From Basidiobolus meristosporus CBS 931.73 (lineage: Eukaryota; Fungi; Basidiobolomycota), in NCBI GenBank assembly GCA_002104905.1, contig MCFE01000385.1:1-64000 (forward strand): a stretch of DNA of 64,000 nucleotides, written 5' to 3'. Positions 10,312 through 24,947 of this stretch are shown in pieces. The notes beneath the pieces are model-generated. The model was not told where the DNA came from. It did not search any database and was given only the letters and a program-made list of their open reading frames with translations. Within the stretch, counting starts at the first letter, position 1, and the number at the start of each line of letters is the position of its first letter. The position numbers and the translations under genes were made by a program.

Positions 10312-13300
10312 ATGGAACCTCAACAGGATAGTGAGTTGATCACCGCGTTGAAGCAAGAGGTTGAGGAGTTAAAAGCACAAAAGGTAGCGGACGAAGTAAA
10401 ATTCGGTAGGTAGTTTTGGAAGTGGCGTTCTGCTCTAGAGATTCCTTTCTAAACTTGGCTGGGCTTTTTTCGTGTTTTAGAACACGAGCTTCACACATCC
10501 GAAACCAAGCTTAATCTATACAAGAAACAACTTCAGCTTTCACGTGAACGTATAGAGAAGATAGAAAAGACCGCCGCTGATGCTGGTGTGTAACCCATTT
10601 TCCTTGGCATTAATTGTTTCTGGTGACGCTAACTCGTATTGCCTCAATGTAGGTACCGAAAACAACGATCTCAAATCTGAACTTCAAAAGAAGATTGAGG
10701 TGATTCAGCAATGCCAGACTGAGATCGGAGAGCTGAAAGCCGAGATCGTCAATTTAGATTCACAGAAGCGCGACGGATTAGCAGCTTTAGATGCTCGAAC
10801 CCTGGAGCTAACTCAGAATAGCGGTATTTTCCTTATCTTGCATCATACTCTGTTCTTCTTTTACTTAATACGTTATTTTCGAAAGATGAATATCAAGAGT
10901 TACAAGAAAAGCTTTCAGCTTCAAAGAAGGAAGTAAATCGTTTGGAAAATGAACTTCAGGAGGTCAGACATGCTGAACTATCAAGCAAGGTACGAATTAC
11001 AAATATGAGCTGGGTTTAGTTCAAATTCAAACCTGGGCGTTTTTTAGTTCAAACAGCAAACATTAGAGCAGGAGCTGCTTCTTTTACGTCAACAAAATGA
11101 TTGGCTCACACAAGAATTGAATACCAAAACCGAAGAGTTCGGGAAATATCGAAGAGAGAAGGTACGCGCATCTTTCCTTGTATGCCATATTGACACTGGC
11201 ATAACCCTGATGATTCATTCTAGACTGCCCAGTTGAGTAAGCTACAAAGTGATCTTGATACAGCAGCAGATAACGAGGCAACCGCTTCTCAAGCTGCTGC
11301 TTCTGCAAACCGCCGTTATGAGGAACAAATGTCCAAATTGGAAGAGGCATTTTCCAAAATCAACGAGCTTCAGAATCGATTGATTTCTGAAGAAGAGAAC
11401 TTCAAATCGGAGATGGCTACTCAAATTAGACTTGCTACTCTATGGGAAAAAAGCTCAAATGAAGCCAAAGAGCGCATGGCGGATTTGGATGGTAAATTTC
11501 CCTAGTTAGCTCCTACATCACTAAGAAGAAATCCTTATCATTGTCACTTTTTTAGAGGTGATAAACGATCTCCAGCGCAGCTTGGACGAAAAGAAAGAGG
11601 AGTTGGAAGAAACTGTCAAGAAGGTAGGTAGTTTAGCTGTGCTGATGAGATCCATTGCGCGCTAACCTTTCATTATCCATAGTATACCGAAGAGAACGAC
11701 TCTCTGAAAGAAGAGCTTAGTTCTTCGGTGACCCAGTTGGAACAGCTTCGGATTGAGCTCCAGCGAGCCAATGAAATATTAGGAACCACAGTTGACCTAG
11801 CCGATACGGAGCAGTCCAGAATTCGTGCAGGGTTATTGTCTCCTACAGCAGCAATTGCAAGCCGTCTACAAAAGTCTGGCAAATCATTCACTGAAGTTTA
11901 TTCGGATTACGTCTCTCTGCAAGAGCAGCTAGCCAATGAAAAGCGGGAGACTTCGCGTTTGAATGAATGTCTTCAACAAATTCTGCAGGATATTGAGGAA
12001 CGTGCCCCCATTCTTCAAGAGCAACGCCGTGAGTACGAGAGGGTCTGCTCAGAGGCGGCCACCATCTCTGACCAACTCAACGCTTTGATCGCTGAGAGCG
12101 ACGAAGTCAATGTGAGACTTGAGGATGCTAAGTTGAATTCCGAACGGTTAGAAAGGGAGAACATTGGGCTTCAGCAAGAGAATCGCGATCTCGGTCGTCA
12201 AGTACAGGCATTGCTACGGGAGATCGAGCGCCAGAAGGGCGTGTCGGAGAGTTTCTTCGACGGAAATTCAAACGACGCTAACGAGAGCTCCGATCTTCTT
12301 GATACAGACTCTGTGATTAGTGAACAACTCACTACATTCAGAAGCATAGCCGAGTTACAGCAGCAAAATCAACGACTATTAAGAATTACTCGTGAGCTTG
12401 GTGAGCGTATGGAGCGAGAGGAGGCTGAAAGAAGGGAGTCTGACATTCAACAAGAGAGCGAGGCTGTCCAAGAGGCTCAAAAGCTGATTGAAACCCTTCG
12501 AGATGAACTTAAGCTTACTAGAACTAAAATGGAGTCGTATCTTCGTGAGCGGGATATGTGTCGTCGCTTACTAGCTCAAGGTGGGCATGAGTTTTCTTCT
12601 AGAGCAGAGAGTCCATCCCCACTTCGCAGCCTTGATTCAGCCAGTGTTGATCCAAGCGGGCCTGATTATCAGAAACTTCTTGTCGAAGTTCAATCAGAGT
12701 TTGACTCCTATCGTAAAGAAACCGATATTGACACTAAAATGCTACGGGATGAAATCAGCTCCATCCAGAAAGAAGCATCCGAGTATCGTATCCAAGTCGC
12801 TAGAGCAAATGCACAGATCGAGTTTTTGAACGAGCGCTACCAACTCCTTATCGAGAACACGAAGCTGCAGCAAAATGAGTTGCAGGAGGCGCGAAAGCGG
12901 AATTCCAATCTTCAAGAGTCTCTTGGTCGCCAAGATATTACCACTCAACGATTGGCCCAGGATTTAGTCGAGTCAAAGGAGGCCCTTGAGCGTATGCGAA
13001 CCGAATGTGCCAATCTTCGAGCAGAAAAAGATCTGAGTAAATCAATCGAGGCCCGTCTCGTTCAAGAGAATGAGGCGTTAAGTAAGGAGAGGACTCACCT
13101 TAACGATTTGATGCGAAATCTCCAAAACATGCAAAATGAGTTTGAGCGAGTCGAAGCTGCAACCAAACGTCGATTCGAGGTTCAAATCCAGCATCTAGAG
13201 GAGGAGTTAAGAAGCACCAAGCAAAAACTCTCTGACGAGATCGATGCTAATAAGTCTCTGAATCTGCGAAAGGAGAATGAGGCTAAGGATTACCAGATCC

Positions 13301-16300
13301 GATTAGATAAAGCCGTTTCCGACCACCAACAGACTAGAGAATCGTTGGTTGCGGCTGAGACTTCAATACAGCACTTAAACGCCAAGATAACCGAGCTCAA
13401 TAAGCAGTTGGAAGTTACCCAGGAGAAGTTGGCGCTGTATCAACGGAAGGGTGAGAACGGGGAAATGTCTCCAGAGGAAAAGTTGGAGCAAGAGATCACC
13501 AGGCTGAAAGCAGAGCTCAGTACTGCGAAGACTGAGTCGGATCAGCTTCGTGAGCATGTCGAACAGTACAAGGCTATCAGCAAATCGAATGAGGATGCAC
13601 TCAACGAGATCAATCAAACTTACGATCAGTACAAGGTGGCTACAGACAAGAAGGTCGAAGAAAACGAAAGGGAGCTTTCTAGTCTCAGAGAAACCATCGA
13701 ATCCTTGAACGAGGAGCTGCGCAAGACGGTGACCGAAATGACCGAAGTGCAGGACAAGATGGATTCAGAGCGTGCCAATTGGGAGACCGAGAAGAAGGTC
13801 TACGAAAGCAAACTGGTCCAATTGAATGAGATTGAAGAACAAGCCAGAATTGCCCAGGAGTCGTTCCAAGCCGATCTCAAACGCCAGTCCAAGATGACCG
13901 AAGAAGCTCAAGAGAAATATGAAAGAGAGTTGCTTATGCATGCCAATGACATCCAGTCGCTGAACAAATTGAAAGAGCAATATCAAAGATTGAATTCGGA
14001 AATTCAATCGTATCAAATCCAGACGGAGACTGCTGAAGCGAAACTCAAATCCTCGGAAGCCTCATGGGCCGGCCAGAAGGACATCTTGGAGAAATCTATC
14101 GGGGAATTAGAAAAGAGATGCCAGGACCTGGTTGCACAAAACAATATCCTGCACTCTCAATTCGAATCCGTAAGCGCCCAAGCGTTACGCATTCAAAAGG
14201 CAAGTAGTGAATCTGCGGTCGTTCCGGAAGGTGAGGCAGGATCAGCCTCTGATAAATCATTGGAGGAGCTACGCGAAGTCTTGCGCTTCCTCCGACGTGA
14301 GAAAGATATACTTCAGTGCCAGCACGAGTTAGCACTGCAAGAATCTAGAAGATTGAAGCAACAGTTGGATCATGCAAACCAATCTTTAGATGAGACTCGT
14401 GCGTTGCTAATAGAGGAGCGTCAACGCGAACAAGAGGCCATTCAATCTGCAACCCAACATGCTGAACTACTCGAGAAAATTAACCAACTTAATATTCTAC
14501 GAGAGAGCAATGTCACACTTCGAGAAGAAAACGAAAAGAACATCGCCAAACTTCAATCACTTGAGAAGACTCTTCAGGAAACCACCAGTAGAATCGACCC
14601 ATTGGAAGAGCAAATCCGCAACTACCAAGCTGACATTGAAGCTAAAGATTCTGAAATCAAGGCGCTGGAAGAAGACAACCAGCGCTGGAAGACGCGCACT
14701 AGTCAAATTCTTCAAAAATATGAGCGTATTGATCCCGTGGAGCATCAAACTCTTAAGGATGAGAGCGAAAGATTGAAGCTAGAATACACAGCGTTAGCCG
14801 AAGAGAAGAGCTCCCTTGCTACTGAGCTTCAAGAGTCCAAGGAGCAATCCTCCAAGTCCATCGAAAATCTGAACAAGCGTATCACAAAGCTGTCTGAGCA
14901 TTGCAATTTATGGAAGAAGCGATATGAGCATGTCAACACACAGAGCAAGGAGAAGCTTCAGCAACAAGCCAGCCAACTGGCTGAGCTCGCCGAGGCCCAG
15001 AAATCGCTAGAAGAATTGAAGGAGGTTAAGCAGCAGCTTGAGAAAGTACAACTTGAGAAAGAGAAACTTCAGGAGGAACGCGACTCAATGGCCAACCAAA
15101 TCTCATCATCTTCGGAATCGGAGAAGACCAAATTCGAGAATATGCGTAAGACCGCACTCGGCTATTACCACAAACTGAAGCAAATCGAAGGGGAGTTCAA
15201 AAAACTTACAGAAGAGAAGAAGTCTTTTGAGCAAGCCAAAACTACAGCAATCGAAGCAGCCGTCAAAGAAAAAACCCAAGAATTGGAGGCTGAGCACGTA
15301 AAGGCTCTGAAAGAAACTGAAATGAGATCGAAGATTAAATTATCGCTTGCGGAAGGTCAAGTGAAAAAGCTACAGGCCAAGCTTCAGGGCGAAGACACCA
15401 CTACCATTGGCAGCAACGTTCCCATACCAGCTCAGAGTGTTGAAACTCCCACATCATCCGAGTTAGCTCAAGATACTGATCATGCCAAACCCGGAGAGAC
15501 AATCCCTGCCGAGCCTGAGCCTTCGCTTGAAAAGCCAGTTGAAAATGAAAAGCCAGAAGTGACTGTCACACCAGAGCATGCGCCAACAGAGCCTGCTGTT
15601 GTGGACAGTACCACTCCTACAAGCACATCGCAACCTCTTGCTGATCCACCGTCAATTTCATCTCCAACCCTCGTTAACAAGAATACACCGGTGGTGACAC
15701 CTGTATCAACACCACCCACACAATCGCCTAGAGTCGCTGCAAGCAAGCCTTCTACACCCATTCAATCGCCGAATATTGGAGGTGCCGCCACTACTCCTAC
15801 ACAAAATCAGAAGGAAACTGAATTGCAAAGAAGGCAAGCGTTGCTAAAGGCGAAGCTACAAAAGCAGAAGCTGCAAAGAATGATGCAACAACAACAACAA
15901 CAGCAGAAACAGCAGCAACAATCAGCACACCAAAAGCTGACTACCTCTCAAAACGATGGACCCCCCGTCAAGCGAGCTAAATCATCATCACCCCAACTTC
16001 AGAAGCTAAGAGTAGATGCACCAATATTTACTCCCAATTTACAGGTGACAACGAAGGGCAAAGAGAAAGAAAACACCCCTTTGCCACCCTCACCTAAGCT
16101 TATAGAGTCGAAGCCTACCACACCCACCCCATCCGTCGGCAATGAGCCCCGTCAAGAAGTTGAGGAGATGGTTGAAGACGGCGAAGTTGCTGAAAGTGAA
16201 GCCAAGATTGTCGAGGCATCCACTATGGAACAGGTGACTATCGAAGTACCAGAGATGAAAGACATCCCTCCTATGATAAAAATCGAAGAATCGGGAGAAC

Positions 16301-16629
16301 TTGAAGCATCCAACGACTTGGAAAAAGATGTCCCTGTAAAGCAAGAGGTTCTGGACGTAGAGCCAACGCCTATTGTTGAAGAAGTTGTATCACAGGATGA
16401 GCAAGATTCTCCTGAAGACGCCGACCTGACTAAACAGGAGATCCAGCCTCAAATTGAAGTAGTCATCGAAACCGCCCCTCCCGAATCAGACATTGTCGAG
16501 AACGCACAAGAGGCGATCGGGGAAGCCGAGACAACAGATATGCCTGGCCTAGGGTTGAAACGGGTCCGTGAGAACATTGATACACCTGTGGATCAGAGTG
16601 AAAGCGAGGCGAAGAAAATCAAGAAGTAG
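10312..16629 (+). CDS. MLP1: Nuclear pore basket coiled-coil protein Mlp1/TPR, multi-exon
   Basis: ATG at 10312; several short 5' exons (first intron 10406-10480) join the 1633-aa final ORF. Contains LSPTAAIASRLQKSGKSFTEVYSDY and AQEKYERELLMHA (TPR/Mlp motifs), long coiled coils, a disordered P/S/T tail and a C-terminal KR...KKIKK NLS-like signal. Confidence 0.92.
15886..15921 (+). repeat. CAA/CAG trinucleotide repeat encoding Q7-K-Q4 in the MLP1 tail
   Basis: caacaacaacaacaacagcagaaacagcagcaacaa seen directly. Confidence 0.85.
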
Positions 16630-17467: not shown

Positions 17468-20400
17468 TCAAACACCCTGGACAACGAACTTTCCCTGTGG
17501 TCCAATGGTGCCCTCAACGGAGATTGGTGGTTCATAGAAGAACGAGACGACAAAGACAAGATAGCTCAGGCAAAGGATAGAGCCTTTGAAATAGTTACTC
17601 TTGCCTTCGGAGTATGTATAGGTAAGCAAGAAAACTGAGAAGAGAACAGTGATCACATCCCAACGTGGGAAGATCAAGGTGAAAGTGTTGTGAATTCCCT
17701 CGATAATCCCTTGACTATGCCATGCTGAAAAGGCCACCAAAGCGGGAATTTGCAGCAAGCTGACTTGTACAGCGTAGGCAGATCCGATTTCCAGACTTAG
17801 TGCGATGTTACCATACATGGCGAACGAGATGGCATTCATAAACTCCGTAACATTGGGCACAAGTGCAAACAGCGTGATTCCCAAGAACTTCTCCTCGATG
17901 CTCATTCCCTCGATAACTACATCCACCGAGTCCACCAAAAGCTCAGCGATGGCCGCAAAAAGGACAGTGGAGGATAACAAAACAATGGTGGATTTTTTGT
18001 TTCCCCATTCAGGGGCATCATGGCCTCCATGCCCTTCATCATCGTCATCCTCATCATAGGGATCTTCGGCGGTATTCTCGATATTCTCAAACACATGTGC
18101 TGGTAAGGGACTGCTATGAGGCACTTCATGCTCGCCATTCACGATGGCATTGGGGTTCGTGCCATTCGCTTCAGGATTGTCGAGGTTTTGCTCCAACGCG
18201 TGTACTACGGCATAATGATGCTGCGGAATTATTTGTTGAAGTAGCCGCTGATACAGAGATGCCCGATTCTTGCTTGCCTCCGTGTGCTGCGGTTGGTGAT
18301 ATATATGCTTGACATGGGTTTTCAGGGTAAACCAGAGGCCGATGAAATATGCTAGGGGCAAGATCGCAGCGCAAATGTACATCAATGGTTTAGCATTGTT
18401 AATGTAAAATGGGTCTCGAGTTGGGTGCACTTGGTTGTATGCGCATTGTTTGCATCCCCAACTACTCTCATTGCCCACATTTGTAGGGCAGTCTGAACAC
18501 TGAAGCTCAAAAGTCCCGTAGATTTGGTAGAAAAGAGTGGGTGTGAATACACCGATAAGCGACATAATAAGGAATGTTGTGGTCACGCCTAAATGTGGCA
18601 TTAGTAAGTTCACCAACATACATTTCAAAAGCACAACTTACTGGCACTTTTGGCATTGAACTTTTGGATCTTCTTCTTCAAGCCACCACTAAGCATACTT
18701 ACTCCAGGCATAAGCAGGAGGCCAGCAAGGAAACTCCCGATAATACTGCCCTCGACCAAAACCCCTTTGCCTTCAGCAATAGCCATTCCATACAAAATAA
18801 TCTCGACGATACTTCCGAAGGTGGCATTGATCACCGCGCCCATTCCGAGTGAACTTTGTGCACTAATAGACGAAACCGCCATGCCAATGAAATAGGCTAG
18901 GGGAAGCACCGAAAACAAGCACAGCGTGAAGATGACTCCTGGCTGTGCAATAGGTGATTCGTGGTTGGTCCAGGGGCCAATAACATGAGCATCAAATAAT
19001 ACGAAGAACACCAGGGGAAGCAAGTTAATGAACATAATGTTAATACCATCGTAGGTGTACTTGTAATATTGAAGGCCTATAGCTTTGTATGTACAGAGAA
19101 GAATCTGCGAGTTCGGAGTGCGCGGTCCGTAGAGCGCAGACCCGTCCTTGAAACGTAATCTCAACGGGGTTCTTCTTAGATGCTTCTTAATGACGTGTGT
19201 GAGCTTGGCCATTGGAACTGAAACCACAAAGAACCAACACAAAGCAGAGACAATAGTCAAAAGTGGAGCTGAATCGATAAATCATTAGCTAGTGATGGCT
19301 GAGGATACCGCCTGCTTGATAAACTTACCAATGACGAAAGTCAACCAGAAATAATATACAAAGCCAGCGAAAGACAATTGTGACCAGGGGGTGACCTTAA
19401 GCCTTGTTTTAGGGCGACCGAGGAGAGGATCCCGGTCGGCAGCTTCGTCGTCGGCCTCGGCTTGTGTGGTCGGAACACTCCCTGAATGTGGGCGGGTATA
19501 GACCCCACCACTCTCAACGGAGTCGGTCCATGCCAGATCAAGGAAATGGTTATCCAAATGCTCCCGAGGCACGCCAATGGGTGTGTCATCAATTCCCTCG
19601 ACGTATCTCCCGAATGGCCAGAATAGATACCATGATAGTCCACGGAGAACCCGAGCATAGTCGCTACCTCCATACGGGGTAAAGCTAAGGAGGATAGATG
19701 TCGCTAGACAAACCACAGCAAGCCACCAGCCAAATAGCACCGTCCACAGAATATTGCCTGGGTACAGATACAGCTCGCCGGTAGGTGAAGGAATTGAGTG
19801 CAACGCGAAATATGCACTTCGAGTAACACTTCGAGATTTTTTATAGAGTGCAGGTTTCCAGAGGGGCAGTCCAAAGGGATGGCTCGTGTTGATTGCCTGT
19901 GGGGGCGAACAAGTAAGTAGGATTACCAAATAACATCAGACAGGTCAAAGTACCTCTTGTCTATCTTTCAATGTCATTTCTCTGTCACCGTCATCATCAC
20001 TGTTATCTTCTTCCGAACCAGCCTCCTGGCGACCATCTACTTCATCATCCGATGATGTATACCGATACTTGACCTTGTGGCTATTTCTGTTGGAACTATG
20101 TCGACTATGCTGTCTAAGTTCCCCCCTATTACTACTGCTGCTGGAAGTGGAGGAATGGACCGAGTTACGTCTGGAGTTAGCTCTCGAACGATTCTTCCGG
20201 CGATGAAGGGAGCCTTTGGATTTTTGGTGACGTAGGGAGCCTCTAGTTGGAGTGGTTGGATTAGAACAGTACGAGGAGCGAGTTCCCGGGATATTGATCA
20301 GCGTGTTGGTAGCAATTGAAGGTGTCACAGCGGGGAGAGTCAAGCCAGGCTGGGATGAGGTAGCTTGCTCAGAGGAAGCGGCCTCATGAGAGTCGGTTTG

Positions 20401-20490
20401 AGCATGAAGGTTTCCCAGTGGCTGAGGCTGAGCGGCGGACGGATCATCTTGCTGCTCGGGGACAGGATTGCCATCACTGTTCGAGTTCAT
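17468..20490 (-). CDS. VNX1: Vacuolar/ER cation/H+ exchanger of the CaCA family, Vnx1 type, multi-exon
   Basis: ATG at 20490; first intron 19953-19897 splices TLKDRQE|AINTSHPFGLPLWKPALYKKSRSV (Vnx1-type N-terminus). Alpha-repeat motifs NATFGSIVE, GSIIGSFLAGLLLMPG, NVTEFMNAISFA and GNIALSLEIGSAYAVQV are present. Stop at 17468. Confidence 0.92.
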
Positions 20491-22873
20491 CAAAGATCAA
20501 AGGGGACAAATTGAAGAGGGCTTAACTACAGATGAGGTGCGAAGGTGAAATTCAGGAAACTGTTGTATACTCGAATCTGGCCACCAACGGACATGAAGGG
20601 GTAAGTTGCGTATTTAAAGGAGAGATGGGAATTAATGATACATAATTGGGCTCACCTGACGCATTAGAGTAGTGGAAATATAAGGGATTTGGACGTACGT
20701 AGCACAGTTGATTCAAACAATACTTCTTTAATGTATATACAAATATATAACGACAGCCTTGGCTTTGATCTTTGGGTCGTTGAATTCAAGACAATTATAA
20801 ACCACCTGAATCCTAATAGCTCTTTAATCTGAAATGGATGTTTCAGGAAAACGGTATCTGTGAAATCTACGGGGTATTCAGCCTCAAATGATGCATACTA
20901 TTACCAATTTCGTAAAACCAAGGAGGGCATCATTTGAGCGGACAGGAAAACGGAGCTTGAACTATAAGTATTGAATAGAAGTGTAGGCCAAACCGAGCTC
21001 GATGCCGGGTTGATTGAAGAGCTCCGTTCAATGCCGCTTCTTGTGTGACACCCTCTATGTCATCTGCCAGACAAATAAGTTGATCTCCACCAGAAGTACC
21101 GTGCCAGGAATCTAGTTCGTCCTACATTATATTTATTGCATACCCAGTTATGGATTTTGTTATCTTGATAACCACGAGTAGAATGGAGGCTGGCAGTGTG
21201 CCTAGTATTTGGCCATCATATACTTCGCCGTCCTCGAATAGCCTTGATGTTTGGGCCATTCTACTGAATGCTGCCTTGGCTTGGTTGAGCCACAAGCAGG
21301 TGTTGAGGTGATTTGGAGCATCAATGGCACGGCAGCATACTATCGTGCAGAATATTCGGAATTTCCACTACACTGGTTTATGATCACCCTTACTACATGC
21401 ACCAAGACAAAGGAGTGCGAATCCTTGAAATAGCACATACCCTATGTGCTTCTTCTGAGTTGCATTCTGTGATAAGCGATGTGGATTTCAATTTGCTTTT
21501 GCTACATCGGTGGCTACTGGGGATACAGCATTGGGTGTCGAGATGACACACTACCTTCGAGCCAATATGAAGTACGGGCACCAGAGCAGCCGGCATATAT
21601 GAGATGTGTCGAATGCACCAAGAAATCGAGAATACATTGCTGTCGACTCATTGGACCGCTCACGTAGATGCATATATTCCCATCCATTTAATCGTCGAAT
21701 CTCATTAAATATGTATTTACACCAGAGCTGAAAAAGGAGATGGAATCATCCTCGGGATCAGGAAACGACCGATGCAAAGATGATATCATTTACTCCGCCT
21801 CACTCCAGAAAATCTGGGACATCCTGTGCTATCATCAAATGAGCCACGAACCGACTGAAGTCACAACGTCACTTGTAGTGTGTCGTGAGCTTTATGATAT
21901 TGAATTCATATGATCTGACGCCAGCGATTATGTGCTAGATCCCGGGACACATCCCTCCAACATGAAATGCCAAACCCCTCACATTAGACTCTCCAAAAGG
22001 CACCGTGGATGGAGAGGCAATCCCAGAAACTCTTGGTTGTTTCTGCATCGGGGGTGGGCTCCTCTGCAAGGCTTCAGTGTGACAGTGAAGTTTCCAGAAT
22101 TCCTCAACCCGATTTAACCGGTGTCATGTTATATGAAAAATCCCTTGGTTTTTCGTAACGCAAATTCAGGTGTTTCTTGCCTCATTATTTATGGATATGT
22201 CTCATTCATGTACTAATCGGTGCATCATTGCTATGTTCATCTACAGGCGAGCCACTCAACTATCCGCTTACTTGATGAATCGGTGTGAAAGCCAAGGACC
22301 ATTAGATGAGGAACCCAACTATGCACCAACTCCACCGAACGTCAAGGTGCTCTGTGGATGGTTATATTGATTGTTGGCGTGAGCTAAGATACTGATTCAG
22401 TAAAGGGGAAAACCTGACAATGTTTCATTTTTATCACTTTTGGGTGTTGAGTACTTCAGACTTCAGGACAGGTGATACAGAAACCACCTATCTCTAAGCT
22501 CAATATCCGCTGGCACGTCCCAGATTAGAGTCCTTTCCACAGTCGCTTTAATGAGTACTCCGCACGATCACGAGGTGATGTCAAACCTCATCTAACCTAA
22601 TCTCTACTCATTGAGTTTACTTGTGTTTTAATTCCAGTGAAGACCGGCACTCATTTGACTCGGAGGAGGGGATTTTTCCGAGGGTAAATAGTTGTCTACG
22701 TTTACCAACTCCTCTGGCGGTATATTTGGAGGCTGAATTAACAGTTTGCGATGATTGGGTAATTAATAACGGTTGATATCAGTGTTTATTAAATAGTGTG
22801 ATGAATGATAAATATCAACCCAGGTTACTATATGGTAATGGGGATTCTAGGACTCTTACTCTGTATGGCTCAT

Positions 22874-24947
22874 TTAAAATGCAACTGCCAAAGCTAAGAG
22901 CGAAAATATAGCGTACATGATGTTCAGCATATCTGCAGCTCCGTTGCCACCACTTTTGGAGACGGCTTTTAGAGAATAGAATGGTAAACAGCTGACTCTG
23001 AAAAACAAGCGACATCCGGGTTACTTACCACTGCAATCAGCTCGGCATATCTTTGCCAACGCGGAAGGCGGAACGTTCTCCTGGCAGGTGAATTTGTTGG
23101 AGAGGGCTATGCAGTTGGTACGATTCAAACTTGCTGGCAAATTTGGGAACAATCCATTTAGATGATTGCGTTGAATATGACTGTGGTTGACAATAGCTTA
23201 GTGAGAGTGTCAGATGGAGCCAAACCCCTCAAATGCTTACAGCGAAGTCAGTGCTTTCAGATTTTGAAGATCCGGCACTTGGCCCACGAGTTGATTATCC
23301 GACAGGATACTAAATGGTGCTGTTAGATATTGACCAACAGAATGCAAAGTCGAATAGACTCACAGTTTTTCCAGGTTGACGAGGTTGCCTATGCTCTTGG
23401 GTATCACACCAATCAATTTGTTGTGAGAAAGATCCCTATTCAACAGCATTAGCATTATGTTTTAGGCTGGGCAAAAGGTTTAACCTACAGTGTATGGAGA
23501 TTCGTCAGCGTAGTGTAGGAGGTGGGGATTTCACTTTGGATTTTGTTATTCTTGAGCTTGCTGAAATTGAACGGTAAGATCAGGTTCATAGTCATAGGTG
23601 CAGATTTCCTACTTACAGAGTGCGAAGGTTGGTACATTTAGAGAGCCCTTCAGGCAATGATCCAGTCAAGTGATTTTGGCTCAGGTATAGCCCTTCAAGG
23701 TTGGAAAGATTACCGATATCGTTCGGAAGAGTTCCCGTAATGTTGTTTCCGTCAAGTGATCTAATATCACGTTGAGTCAATGACCATGCGATGGTCTACA
23801 TGGATGGAATGAGAAGCATACAAAACTTGTAGGGCGTTCATCTGATAAATAAAGGCTGGCAGCTCCCCAAGAGAATTGTTTGCCAAATATCTAATACCAA
23901 GAGATTAGCTCGTCTTGCAACAAACGATTCCATAGATGGAGAACCTACAGGCCCTTCAAATTGGTGAGTTGGCTCATGGTATTGGGCAAAACGTTGATTT
24001 TGTTTGCATTCAAGTGTCTGTGAGAAAATAGCTAATTGGTTAGGCTGCTTCTTTAACCTCGAATATGCCATATACATACAGGCTTTGGAGGTTGACTAGA
24101 TTTCCGATAGACTCAGGAATCGATGTTATTCCAGTATTTGCAACGTTGCTGGCTAGTGGTTAGAAAGCCTCAAAGGCTGAGAAAGACATCAATCCAAACT
24201 TACATCGATATTAATGTTGTAACTTCGGTAATCTCGGAGAGAATATTACTTAATGTGTTGTTGCTAACGTCTCTACAAAAAGACAACAGAGTCAGTGATA
24301 TTCTAATACGTCTGAACGATACGACTTACATGGTGAGCAGTCCATTAAGCTGAGATACCTCGGCTGGTAGTTTTCCCGAAAGATTGTTTTGCGCTAAATC
24401 TCTGTAATGGCTGTAAGTTGATATGTGCGCTCCACATTCAAATAACAATTACTCCGTACAATGACTTGATGCGACCGCCCTTATTACACTGGACACCTTG
24501 CCAACTACAGCATGATGCCAGATCCTCGCTGGTCCATCCATTCTTCTGAACCCAGTTGTTTCCGCTGAGAGCAGTAAATACAGACTTGAGCACACGACAG
24601 TTGCCTTTGAGGTTCTCGTACTGGGCGTCAGACAAAACAACGTCAGACGGAAGCCCAGGGATGTTTGGGTGGCCAGTAGGACCAGGTTTCTCTGAGGTAT
24701 CAGTCTCGGGGTCAACAACAGTTACATCTATAGGACCATCATCCGTGGGACTTCCATCGTCTTTATCATCTCCATCATCGGTGGGATCAGGCCCTGAATC
24801 CCAATTCGTGGATTCATTCTCGTATTGGGTAGGGGTGGGGCTAACTCCGCTTCCATCTTCGGGTTCGCTACCATCACTCTCTTGTGCAAGCACAAAGGAC
24901 AACAACGCTAAAGAAAAGATCACTATGTAAAGACTACGAAATCTCAT
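22874..24947 (-). CDS. Secreted, probably GPI-anchored, plant-type extracellular LRR protein (about 11 LRRs, about 12 exons)
   Basis: Signal peptide MRFRSLYIVIFSLALLSFVLA; acidic Pro/Thr linker; LRR N-cap W...CCSWQGVQC; LRR exons such as DLAQNNLSGKLPAEV, SLDGNNITGTLPNDIGNLSNLEGLYLSQNHLTGSLP, DLSHNKLIGVIPKSIGNLVNLEKL; Cys-rich C-cap; last exon SKSGGNGAADMLNIMYAIFSLLALAVAF* (omega site plus hydrophobic tail). Most exons are absent from the ORF track. Confidence 0.88.

What the first reader, a model, noticed from the sequence alone, without database searches (positions are those of the whole stretch)
22874..24947. Plant-receptor-like extracellular LRR protein with a GPI signal in a fungus
Seen in sequence: signal peptide, acidic stalk, W-x-C-x-W-x-G-V-x-C cap, about 11 LRRs of which several have the plant-specific LxxNxLxGxIP form, a Cys cap and a GPI-type tail, with no kinase or TM domain. 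Established: this ectodomain architecture typifies plant RLP/RLK/PGIP proteins and is uncommon in Dikarya. Inference: it may be a surface pattern-recognition receptor, co-receptor or enzyme inhibitor. The ORF track shows only the first exon, so it is easily missed.
Basis: partly seen in the sequence, partly recalled or inferred. Interest (0 to 1): 0.75.

Follow-up and report, generated by a model that had tools for sequence, protein, structure and literature searches.

The report
Fungal lipid-anchored plant-type LRR surface protein
This is a real, already annotated 12-exon gene of the early-diverging fungus Basidiobolus meristosporus for a secreted, probably GPI-anchored protein whose leucine-rich-repeat domain looks like a plant receptor ectodomain; it belongs to an unstudied family shared with the bread-mould group, in a kingdom usually said to lack such receptors.

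Summary
A 12-exon minus-strand gene (24947 to 22874) encodes 478 residues. In order: signal-peptide-like start, disordered acidic stretch (net charge -21), four-Cys cap (C-x28-CC-x-W-x-GV-x-C), 11 LRRs (6 in plant-specific form), four-Cys C-cap, and a GPI-type tail with nothing after the hydrophobic end.

My splice model is identical to GenBank ORX90340.1 ("L domain-like protein", Basidiobolus meristosporus), so the gene was not missed by annotation.

The predicted fold (pLDDT 86) matches plant LRR ectodomains. It matches the kinase-less receptor TOO MANY MOUTHS over almost that whole chain (Z 32.4).

No kinase-like sequence lies anywhere in the window.

It is not a one-off. Relatives with the same caps and tail occur as a paralogue, in B. 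ranarum and in Mucoromycota (Phycomyces, Umbelopsis, Bifiguratus, Backusella, Rhizopus, Jimgerdemannia). They share phase-2 intron positions, which argues for old vertical descent rather than recent transfer.

Function is untested. My best guess is a membrane-proximal binding module or co-receptor. The main rival is a wall-integrity protein analogous to Ecm33.

The organism is not in Dikarya.

The scan noted this same stretch before, and noted a separate LRR-TM-SH3 gene elsewhere in this genome, which I did not check.

The parts
22874..24947 (-). Whole gene, start codon to stop codon: 12 exons, 478 codons. Equals ORX90340.1.
   Evidence: model; identical to P0001; public record, same span.
24460..24947 (-). 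Exon 1 (488 nt, residues 1-162 plus 2 nt): signal peptide, acidic stretch, N-cap and start of LRR1. Donor GTACGG.
   Evidence: The phmmer search with this exon returned P0001 at 6e-105.
24885..24947 (-). Signal-peptide-like start, residues 1-21: two Arg, a 15-residue hydrophobic core, then V-L-A before Q22.
   Evidence: Sequence rule only. Helix 3-20 in the model. Paralogue P0153 and relatives P0092 and P0080 have the same kind of start.
24636..24884 (-). Disordered acidic, Pro/Gly/Ser/Thr-rich stretch, residues 22-104, net charge -21.
   Evidence: composition. (pLDDT under 50 at 24-67). Length and composition vary among relatives.
24474..24635 (-). N-terminal cap, residues 105-158: helix, then C117 ... 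GW ... C146 C147 x W x GV x C154.
   Evidence: LRRNT_2 is the only Pfam hit, at 15.8-16.1 bits, below the cut-off of 20.7. Twelve invariant columns across 5 fungal caps. It aligns to the N-caps of RXEG1, PSKR1, GSO1 and BAK1.
24330..24401 (-). Exon 2 (72 nt): rest of LRR1, plant-specific form.
24204..24272 (-). Exon 3 (69 nt): LRR2, a 23-residue unit.
24080..24148 (-). Exon 4 (69 nt): LRR3, a 23-residue unit.
23949..24017 (-). Exon 5 (69 nt): LRR4, a 23-residue unit.
23822..23890 (-). Exon 6 (69 nt): LRR5, a 23-residue unit.
23617..23760 (-). Exon 7 (144 nt): LRR6 and LRR7, both plant-specific form. Contains the lone Cys321.
   Evidence: LRR_1 4.1e-08 and LRR_4 7e-08, both above cut-off..
23489..23560 (-). 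Exon 8 (72 nt): LRR8, 24 residues, with S in place of the G.
23364..23435 (-). Exon 9 (72 nt): LRR9, plant-specific form, the most conserved repeat in the family.
23241..23309 (-). Exon 10 (69 nt): LRR10, plant-specific form.
23029..23180 (-). Exon 11 (152 nt): LRR11 and the C-terminal Cys cap. The cap is at 23033-23122 (residues 418-447; Cys 421, 430, 443, 447).
   Evidence: C421, N426, F428, L439, A440 and C443 are invariant in the family. The fold alignment to TMM runs through to residue 449.
22874..22965 (-). Exon 12 (89 nt plus stop): GPI-type signal. Small residues S453-A459 hold the likely attachment site (G455 or N456). A short spacer follows, then hydrophobic I464-F478 ends the protein.
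   Evidence: All five full-length family members end the same way. Helix 457-477 in the model. No dedicated predictor was available.

Best explanation
The gene encodes a secretory-pathway protein that is most likely cleaved at its C-terminal signal and attached to a GPI lipid. This would hold a plant-type LRR solenoid (11 repeats with disulfide caps at both ends) within about ten residues of the outer face of the plasma membrane. An acidic, probably glycosylated, disordered N-terminal stretch would extend outwards.

It belongs to an unnamed family that is old in early-diverging fungi (Basidiobolus plus Mucoromycota) and was inherited vertically.

Shown here: the gene model, the domain order, the plant-ectodomain fold, the family and its shared introns, and the lack of any kinase.

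Inferred, about 0.8: actual secretion and GPI anchoring.

Inferred, about 0.35: the working mode. I propose a binding module that captures a protein, peptide or glycan ligand on its concave sheet. Having no cytoplasmic part, it would act through a membrane-spanning partner. Kinase-less TOO MANY MOUTHS works this way with ERECTA-family kinases in plants, and GPI-anchored CD14 and Nogo receptor work this way in animals (from my own knowledge).
For: - Gene model: 12 exons with canonical splice sites, identical to an independently made public model.
- LRR families hit at 1e-25 to 1e-29.
- AlphaFold2 model: pLDDT 86.4, pTM 0.79, above 95 across all repeat exons.
- Closest solved sequences are plant LRR-kinase ectodomains, FLS2 at 1.5e-116.
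- Fold matches: FLS2 Z 35.6; TMM Z 32.4, rmsd 2.8, 328 of 367 residues, model 110-449; LRX8 Z 29.1; PGIP Z 27.6, 298 of 313 residues.
- The cap aligns to plant N-caps, including the CC doublet of RXEG1 and PSKR1.
- A GPI-type tail with no residues after the hydrophobic end is present in all five full-length relatives. There are 7 N-glycosylation sequons and 8 cap cysteines.
- Family: a cap-plus-3-LRR profile scores fungal members 132-192 bits and everything else 108 or less. The eight fungal rows form one side of a branch, SH-aLRT 95.
- Nine phase-2 intron positions are shared between Basidiobolus and Mucoromycota genes.
- Neighbours are ordinary eukaryotic genes and the composition is even.
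- No kinase-like sequence in the window.
Against: - There is no transcript or protein evidence.
- Signal peptide and GPI signal rest on sequence rules, not a trained predictor.
- Residues on the concave face are only slightly more conserved than convex variable ones (identity 0.27 against 0.20 in four full-length members), so no shared ligand is indicated.
- No partner is known. The LRR-TM-SH3 gene noted elsewhere in this genome (s1-209755) was not examined here.
- In ascomycete wall proteins the disordered stretch usually lies next to the anchor (as the preprint reports for ACW-1). Here it is at the far end, so rules learnt there may not apply.
- The cap does not reach Pfam's LRRNT_2 cut-off in this protein (15.8-16.1 against 20.7 bits).
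Confidence: 0.6

Rival explanations
1. It is a wall-integrity or scaffold protein. After GPI addition it stays at the membrane or is cross-linked into the wall, where it helps organise or retain wall polymers and proteins. In this reading it is a functional stand-in for Ecm33/ACW-1/Sps2 in lineages that mostly lack that family, and not a signalling receptor.
For: - Ecm33/ACW-1 proteins are GPI-anchored beta-solenoids with LRR-like repeats and Cys-bearing caps, of similar size. Their loss weakens the wall (bioRxiv 10.64898/2026.05.09.718313).
- That preprint finds ACW-1 homologues almost only in Ascomycota. Outside it there are a few in Mortierellales, Dimargaritales and Harpellales, which are not the lineages where I see this family.
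- The family looks low-copy and conserved: two copies seen in B. meristosporus and one or two listed per Mucorales genome in PMC2939053 Table S5.
- The concave face shows no strong conservation or hypervariability.
Against: - No sequence relation to Ecm33. No PF12454 or receptor L-domain hit appeared on exon 1 or on P0001.
- The repeats are canonical 23/24-residue LRRs rather than units of about 35 residues.
- The disordered stretch is N-terminal, so the solenoid would sit at the membrane rather than be pushed into the wall.
- The nearest folds are ligand-binding receptor ectodomains.
Confidence: 0.25
2. It is a secreted enzyme inhibitor of the PGIP kind. The solenoid would bind and block a hydrolase from competitors, prey or hosts, either while anchored or after release from the anchor.
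For: - The model aligns to bean PGIP over nearly the whole chain (1ogq Z 27.6, rmsd 2.5, 298 of 313 residues; also the PGIP-PG complex 8ikw).
- It has 11 repeats, against 10 in PGIP by my recollection.
- From memory, PGIP also has four N-terminal and four C-terminal cysteines including a CC doublet. I did not check this here.
Against: - PGIPs are soluble wall proteins without a hydrophobic C-terminal signal. This tail is conserved in the family.
- Receptor ectodomains score higher by fold and by sequence.
- No target enzyme is suggested by the gene's neighbours.
Confidence: 0.07
3. The C-terminal hydrophobic stretch is a true membrane helix, making this a tail-less single-pass receptor-like protein rather than a GPI protein.
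For: - The model draws a helix at 457-477.
- TMHMM-type tools often call such tails membrane helices. Plant receptor-like proteins such as TMM have a helix and a very short tail (my own knowledge).
Against: - The protein ends inside the hydrophobic stretch, with no basic stop-transfer residues.
- A run of small residues (S-G-G-N-G-A-A) lies 8-10 residues upstream, as GPI attachment sites require.
- The same layout recurs in all five full-length relatives although the sequence itself is not conserved.
Confidence: 0.08
4. It is a recent horizontal acquisition from a plant or from a bacterium. Basidiobolus is known for bacterial gene gains (my own knowledge).
For: - Outside fungi, the best full-length matches are plant receptor kinases or receptor-like proteins, and Bacteroidota T9SS LRR proteins, at 30-36% identity.
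- The cap's best non-fungal matches are giant bacterial and diatom multi-module LRR proteins.
Against: - Eleven spliceosomal introns. Nine phase-2 positions are shared with Mucoromycota homologues.
- The fungal sequences group together, apart from bacterial, unnamed and the three plant rows.
- The family has its own cap and C-cap signatures.
- G+C matches the surrounding DNA and the flanks hold ordinary eukaryotic genes.
- There is no DNA-level repeat signal of recent duplication.
Confidence: 0.04

Closest known systems
TOO MANY MOUTHS (TMM), an Arabidopsis LRR receptor-like protein without a kinase
   Same: The fold matches from N-cap to C-cap over almost the whole TMM chain (5xjo_C Z 32.4, rmsd 2.8, 328 of 367 residues, model 110-449). 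The phmmer E-value is 7.8e-33. The nearest language-model cluster is the TMM cluster at 0.88, which is a lead only. Both have no cytoplasmic signalling domain.
   Different: TMM is held by a membrane helix (my own knowledge), whereas this protein has a GPI-type tail. Identity is only 24-25%. TMM lacks the long acidic N-terminal stretch. TMM's partners (ERECTA-family kinases) have no known fungal counterpart.
Plant LRR receptor-kinase ectodomains (FLS2, MIK2, HAESA, TDR/PXY, PEPR1, ERL1)
   Same: These are the best matches by sequence (FLS2 1.5e-116) and by fold (Z 32-36). They share the 24-residue plant-specific repeat and the N-cap, with W...C-x-W-x-GV-x-C at the same place.
   Different: Those proteins have 20-29 repeats, a membrane helix and a kinase. 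This one has 11 repeats, four of them 23-residue units, with no helix-plus-tail and no kinase anywhere in the window.
PGIP (polygalacturonase-inhibiting protein) and the LRX LRR domains
   Same: Similar size and capped solenoid: 1ogq Z 27.6 over 298 of 313 residues, and LRX8 6tme Z 29.1.
   Different: They are soluble or extensin-linked wall proteins without a GPI signal. Inhibitor or RALF-binding functions were not tested here.
Ecm33 / ACW-1 / Sps2 family of fungal GPI-anchored wall proteins
   Same: Both are fungal, have a signal peptide and a GPI anchor, and form a beta-solenoid with LRR-like repeats and Cys-bearing caps of similar length (preprint 10.64898/2026.05.09.718313).
   Different: There is no Ecm33 domain hit. 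This protein has canonical 23/24-residue LRRs, not units of about 35 residues. The disordered stretch is at the opposite end. The taxonomic range is different (mostly Ascomycota).
Leishmania promastigote surface antigen (PSA-2/GP46)
   Same: It has the same overall plan in another non-plant eukaryote: signal peptide, Cys-flanked array of 24-25-residue LRRs, and a predicted GPI anchor (PMC2584048).
   Different: PSA has its own repeat signature, G(T/S)LPxxW...; the authors liken the repeats most to those of plant NBS-LRR proteins. It has a Thr/Ser-rich stretch and a Cys-rich region before the anchor, and it forms a large, fast-evolving multigene family. I made no sequence comparison.
Secreted LRR proteins of Mucor, Phycomyces and Rhizopus listed by Soanes and Talbot 2010
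   Same: These are probably the same family. They have a signal peptide, several LRR_1 hits at residues 160-390, and plant receptor kinases as top Swiss-Prot hits. One Phycomyces entry has LRRNT_2 (PMC2939053 Table S5).
   Different: They are only listed there, not described as a family. No GPI signal, cap or intron analysis was given. I could not fetch those sequences to confirm identity.

Membership tests
Plant-type extracellular LRR domain (ectodomain class of LRR-RLK/RLP/PGIP) | Repeats of 24 residues with L-x-x-L-x-L-x-x-N-x-L-x-G-x-I-P | tested here: met
   6 of 11 repeats carry N-x-L-x-G-x-(I/L/V/F)-P and one more has S for G. Four are 23-residue units without the G. LRR_14, LRR_4, LRR_1 and LRR_8 score 1e-25 to 1e-29.
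Plant-type extracellular LRR domain (ectodomain class of LRR-RLK/RLP/PGIP) | N-terminal cap LRRNT_2 (PF08263) above Pfam's cut-off | tested here: inconclusive
   LRRNT_2 is the only family hit, but at 15.8-16.1 bits against a cut-off of 20.7. The paralogue's cap reaches 21.1, Umbelopsis 18.9, and two others 8-9. The fold and local alignments place it on plant N-caps.
Plant-type extracellular LRR domain (ectodomain class of LRR-RLK/RLP/PGIP) | Capped right-handed LRR solenoid superposable on solved plant ectodomains | tested here: met
   Model pLDDT 86.4. FLS2 Z 35.6, HAESA Z 34.5, TMM Z 32.4 over almost the whole chain.
LRR receptor kinase (LRR-RLK) | Membrane helix followed by a protein kinase domain | tested here: not met
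   The reading frame ends at 22874 inside the hydrophobic tail. tblastn with three plant LRR-kinases hits only LRR exons in the 64 kb. There are no sizeable ORFs downstream. The public model also ends there.
LRR receptor-like protein (RLP) | Single membrane helix with a short cytoplasmic tail | tested here: not met
   No residue follows the C-terminal hydrophobic stretch, and there is no basic stop-transfer motif.
GPI-anchored protein | N-terminal signal peptide plus a C-terminal signal: small attachment-site residues, a polar spacer, and a terminal hydrophobic stretch | tested here: inconclusive
   All parts are visible by rule: V-L-A|Q at residues 19-22, S-G-G-N-G-A-A at 453-459, and hydrophobic I464-F478. 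They are conserved as a layout in five relatives. No trained predictor (SignalP, NetGPI) and no experiment were available.
Ecm33 / ACW-1 / Sps2 fungal GPI wall proteins | N-terminal Ecm33 domain (PF12454) and repeats of about 35 residues, with the disordered region next to the anchor | tested here: not met
   Pfam scans of exon 1 at E up to 10 and of P0001 at E up to 0.01 list no Ecm33 or receptor L-domain family. The repeats are 23-24 residues. The disordered stretch is N-terminal.
PGIP | Soluble wall protein of about 10 LRRs that inhibits polygalacturonase | not testable with these tools
   The fold match is good (1ogq Z 27.6). However, the GPI-type tail argues against a soluble protein, and inhibition needs an assay.
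Leishmania PSA | PSA repeat signature G(T/S)LPxxWxx(M/I)xxLxxLxL and a CGC-containing C-terminal domain | not tested
   Only the published description was read. No PSA sequence was fetched.
Unnamed early-diverging-fungal GPI-LRR family (defined here) | Cap C-x28-CC-x-W-x2-V-x-C, C-cap C...N-x-F...LA-x2-C, a GPI-type tail, and phase-2 introns between repeats | tested here: met
   Invariant columns in A1 and A3. The profile score gap is 132-192 against 108 or less. Nine intron positions are shared. The fungal rows form one side of a branch, SH-aLRT 95.

The most novel reading that the evidence does not exclude
The family is the ligand-binding half of an ancestral fungal cell-surface LRR recognition system. 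A GPI-anchored plant-type ectodomain would hand a peptide, protein or microbial pattern to a membrane-spanning partner. One candidate partner is the LRR-TM-SH3 protein noted elsewhere in this genome, which I did not examine. The system would have been kept in Mucoromycota and Basidiobolus and lost or replaced in most Dikarya. That would overturn the view that fungi lack LRR-based surface perception.
Probability: 0.12. Interest if true: 0.8.

Novelty: new member of a known kind. Interest (0 to 1): 0.45.

Why it matters
The standard statement, from a 101-genome survey, is that LRR receptors are almost entirely absent from fungi (PMC2939053). That survey defined receptors as LRR plus one membrane helix and set aside secreted LRR proteins as 'not widespread'.

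This gene shows that early-diverging fungi keep a conserved, intron-rich family. Its ectodomain is, by fold, a plant receptor-like protein, and it is probably fixed to the membrane by a lipid anchor. A filter based on membrane helices can misclassify such proteins.

The family also occurs in genetically tractable or medically relevant Mucorales such as Rhizopus, Phycomyces and (per Table S5) Mucor. Its role, whether perception of neighbours, mates, hosts or bacteria, or wall organisation, is therefore directly testable.

If it proves to be only a wall scaffold, it is an ordinary surface protein with an unusual pedigree.

Tried and rejected
1. Word-based protein search with exon 1 found nothing in the allowed length range of 89-283 residues. 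The language-model atlas gave nothing for exon 1.

2. Both full-length word searches (P0001, and a five-member family profile) were swamped by plant receptor proteins and Bacteroidota T9SS LRR proteins. Only the 8000 candidates sharing most words were scored, and even two query members were not listed. These searches therefore say little about which fungi have the family. I could not test presence in Dikarya, chytrids or other Zoopagomycota.

3. The cap alone, and a five-member cap profile, against solved structures gave only marginal E-values (0.013 and 0.1). All hits fall on plant N-caps.

4. Conservation of the concave face against the convex face gave no clear signal (0.27 against 0.20 identity).

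5. The tandem-repeat finder saw no exon-plus-intron periodicity, so the cassettes are old.

6. The tree rests on 117 columns. The 'careful' run did not finish, so only the quick tree is reported. Only 3 plant rows passed the coverage filter, which used a profile built from fungal sequences. Two long-branch rows (diatom P0003, unnamed P0121) fell among the fungi in the first tree and were left out of the second. The tree shows that the fungal sequences cohere. It does not show where they came from.

7. Rejected: recent transfer from plants or bacteria (shared introns), a hidden kinase exon, and membership of Ecm33.

8. The atlas scores for TMM and PII-2-like clusters (0.88) are below the level the tool calls reliable, and I treat them as leads only.
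Full report
THE GENE MODEL

On the minus strand an ATG at 24947 opens a 162-codon exon. It is followed by a ladder of short open stretches that each read as one leucine-rich repeat. A search over GT..AG introns of 35-140 nt that keep the frame open gives one best chain of 12 exons and 478 codons, ending at the stop at 22874-22876.

The exons are 24947-24460, 24401-24330, 24272-24204, 24148-24080, 24017-23949, 23890-23822, 23760-23617, 23560-23489, 23435-23364, 23309-23241, 23180-23029 and 22965-22874. The 11 introns are 53-63 nt, all GT..AG. Ten are phase 2 and cut every repeat at the same point. The repeat exons are 69, 72 or 144 nt.

HOW THE SPLICED MODEL WAS HANDLED

I built the joined translation only inside scripts, to define the model and to compare it with a database entry. 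It was never typed into or handed to a search tool. Searches were made exon by exon, by reference.

The exon-1 search then returned a database protein, P0001, of 478 residues. One search showed it to be identical to the model. From then on I used the id P0001. A joined-sequence search as such was therefore left out.

IDENTITY AND CONTEXT

P0001 is ORX90340.1, 'L domain-like protein', of Basidiobolus meristosporus CBS 931.73. Its gene lies at 22874-24947 of contig MCFE01000385.1, the same numbers as in the window. So the public annotation already has this exact splice model. The organism is an early-diverging fungus, not a member of Dikarya.

Neighbours are ordinary eukaryotic genes:
- an Mlp1/TPR nucleoporin (11728-16629, +)
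- a YccF plus Na/Ca-exchanger membrane protein (17468-20493, -)
- a DAG/sphingosine-kinase-like gene just upstream (from about 25800, -)

G+C is even across the region at 0.40-0.48. The 2.3 kb downstream holds no sizeable ORF. tblastn with three plant LRR kinases finds nothing kinase-like in the 64 kb. No paralogue lies in the window.

ANATOMY

- Residues 1-21 look like a signal peptide: two Arg, a 15-residue hydrophobic core, and V-L-A before Q22.
- Residues 22-104 are acidic and rich in Pro, Gly, Ser and Thr (net charge -21). They are disordered in the model.
- Residues 105-158 form the cap: a helix, then C117, GW at 137-138, and C146-C147-x-W-x-G-V-x-C154.
- Eleven repeats follow (159-417). 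Six have the plant-specific N-x-L-x-G-x-I/L-P, one has S for G, and four (repeats 2-5) are 23-residue units of the L-P-x-x-I-G-x-L kind.
- Residues 418-447 carry four more cysteines.
- The end is a run of small residues (S453-A459), a short spacer, and a hydrophobic stretch that terminates the protein. This is the layout of a GPI attachment signal, not of a membrane helix with a tail.
- There are seven N-x-S/T sequons.

Pfam gives LRR_14 3.7e-29, LRR_4 1.9e-28, LRR_1 3.4e-27 and LRR_8 1.1e-25. For the cap, LRRNT_2 is the only family hit. It scores 15.8-16.1 bits, below the cut-off of 20.7.

FOLD

I ran AlphaFold2 with a 41-row alignment. Mean pLDDT is 86.4 and pTM 0.79, with blocks of 95-98 through all repeat exons. 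That fits the exon joins.

By sequence, the closest solved proteins are plant receptor-kinase ectodomains: FLS2 1.5e-116, GSO1, RGFR, PEPR1, MIK2, ERL1 and HAESA. Several alignments start in the cap.

Foldseek and the second-look aligner agree:
- FLS2: Z 35.6
- MIK2: Z 34.6
- HAESA: Z 34.5
- TOO MANY MOUTHS: Z 32.4, rmsd 2.8, 328 of 367 residues, model 110-449, so almost the whole chain is covered
- LRX8: Z 29.1
- PGIP: Z 27.6 over 298 of 313 residues

The cap alone aligns, weakly but always at the right place, to the N-caps of RXEG1 and PSKR1 (both with the CC doublet) and to those of GSO1, BAK1 and SERK2.

THE FAMILY

The exhaustive search with exon 1 gave 223 hits at E up to 0.001. Among the 150 listed, eleven have the double-Cys cap, and every one that carries an organism name is fungal:
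- B. ranarum (P0015)
- Umbelopsis isabellina (P0046)
- Phycomyces blakesleeanus (P0092)
- Bifiguratus adelaidae (P0080)
- Jimgerdemannia flammicorona (P0053)
- Backusella circina (P0107, P0122)
- Rhizopus arrhizus (P0125)

A B. meristosporus paralogue, P0153 (41% identity over 88% of the query), came from the full-length search. P0015 is closer to P0153 (50%) than to P0001 (40-42%).

All five full-length members share the domain order, 12 invariant cap columns, a C-cap with C, N-x-F, L-A and C invariant, and a GPI-type tail. Four of them also begin with a signal peptide; the Umbelopsis model (P0046) does not, probably because its 5' exons are mispredicted.

A profile of the cap plus three repeats scores fungal members 132-192 bits and all other fetched proteins 108 or less. 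In a quick maximum-likelihood tree of that region, the eight fungal rows form one side of a branch (SH-aLRT 95) once two long-branch rows are left out.

I mapped exons of the paralogue and of the Phycomyces, Umbelopsis and Bifiguratus genes on their own loci. Nine phase-2 intron positions fall at identical alignment columns in Basidiobolus and Mucoromycota genes. This, together with the lack of any DNA-level repeat, points to an old, vertically inherited gene.

OUTSIDE THE FAMILY

The cap's other matches are giant proteins that repeat the unit 'cap plus a few LRRs' 4 to 20 times. The named ones come from Saprospiraceae (with a T9SS sorting domain, LRRNT_2 above cut-off), from Desulfonema and from the diatom Attheya. 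The capped plant-type module is thus spread over plants, stramenopiles, bacteria and these fungi. My data do not say where the fungal one came from.

HOW IT LIKELY WORKS

Shown: an extracellular-type, disulfide-capped, N-glycosylatable LRR solenoid with no cytoplasmic part.

Inferred (about 0.8): it enters the secretory pathway and receives a GPI anchor near G455/N456. That leaves the solenoid within about ten residues of the membrane, with the acidic stretch pointing outwards.

Inferred (about 0.35): it binds a ligand on its concave sheet and signals through a membrane-spanning partner, as TMM does in plants and CD14 or Nogo receptor do in animals (my own knowledge).

The main rival (about 0.25) is a wall-integrity role like that of Ecm33/ACW-1. 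These are GPI-anchored LRR-like solenoids described mostly in Ascomycota and reported as rare in Mucoromycota and Zoopagomycota (preprint 10.64898/2026.05.09.718313). This protein has no Ecm33 domain hit.

Residues of the concave face are only slightly better conserved than convex ones, which decides nothing.

WHAT WAS KNOWN

Soanes and Talbot (PMC2939053) reported that LRR receptors are almost absent from fungi. Their Table S5 nevertheless lists secreted LRR proteins of Mucor, Phycomyces and Rhizopus whose best Swiss-Prot hits are plant receptor kinases. These are very probably this family. They are not described further there.

I found no paper on GPI-anchored LRR proteins of Mucorales or on LRR proteins of Basidiobolus. 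Leishmania PSA shows the same plan in another non-plant lineage (PMC2584048).

The scan's own notes had flagged this same stretch twice more (s1-212636, s1-222469). They also flagged an LRR-TM-SH3 gene elsewhere in this genome (s1-209755), which I could not examine.

LIMITS

- There is no expression evidence, no trained signal-peptide or GPI predictor, and no whole-genome or whole-kingdom count.
- Both full-length word searches were saturated by plant and bacterial LRR proteins.

VERDICT

This is a real, correctly annotated gene and a clear member of the plant-type extracellular LRR class, with a GPI-type anchor. It represents an unstudied but conserved family of early-diverging fungi. That is moderately interesting. 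It is a testable exception to a textbook generalisation, not a new kind of system.

Noticed in passing
P0002-P0150 (hits), e.g. P0002, P0003, P0005, P0011: Proteins of 1000-3500 residues repeat the unit 'LRRNT_2-like cap plus a few LRRs' 4 to 20 times within one chain. The named examples come from Saprospiraceae (with a T9SS sorting domain), Desulfonema and the diatom Attheya. An N-terminal 'cap' used as an internal, repeated module is unusual.
   Followed up: partly
L002:1501-3818 (Phycomyces blakesleeanus gene for P0092): The public model has odd exons of 68, 76, 28 and 77 nt, with phase 1 and phase 0 introns and an 11-residue insert, where its relatives have regular 72-nt phase-2 cassettes. 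This is probably a mis-spliced annotation in that record.
   Followed up: no
L003:1501-3751 (Umbelopsis isabellina gene for P0046): The public model starts with two tiny exons (51 and 43 nt) and has no hydrophobic signal peptide, unlike all relatives. The 5' end is probably mispredicted.
   Followed up: no
window 17468-20493 (-): One annotated 950-residue gene combines a YccF inner-membrane-component domain with Na/Ca-exchanger domains. I did not look into this domain combination.
   Followed up: no
window 23617-23760, residue Cys321: A ninth, unpaired cysteine sits in repeat 7 (S-K-C-T-N-L). It is conserved in the two B. meristosporus copies and in B. ranarum, but not in the Mucoromycota members. 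It could be a free thiol or an intermolecular disulfide site.
   Followed up: no
window 11728-16629 (+): A 1633-codon uninterrupted ORF encodes an Mlp1/TPR nuclear-basket protein (TPR_MLP1_2 at 8.6e-34). It is striking next to a gene that has 11 introns in 2 kb.
   Followed up: no
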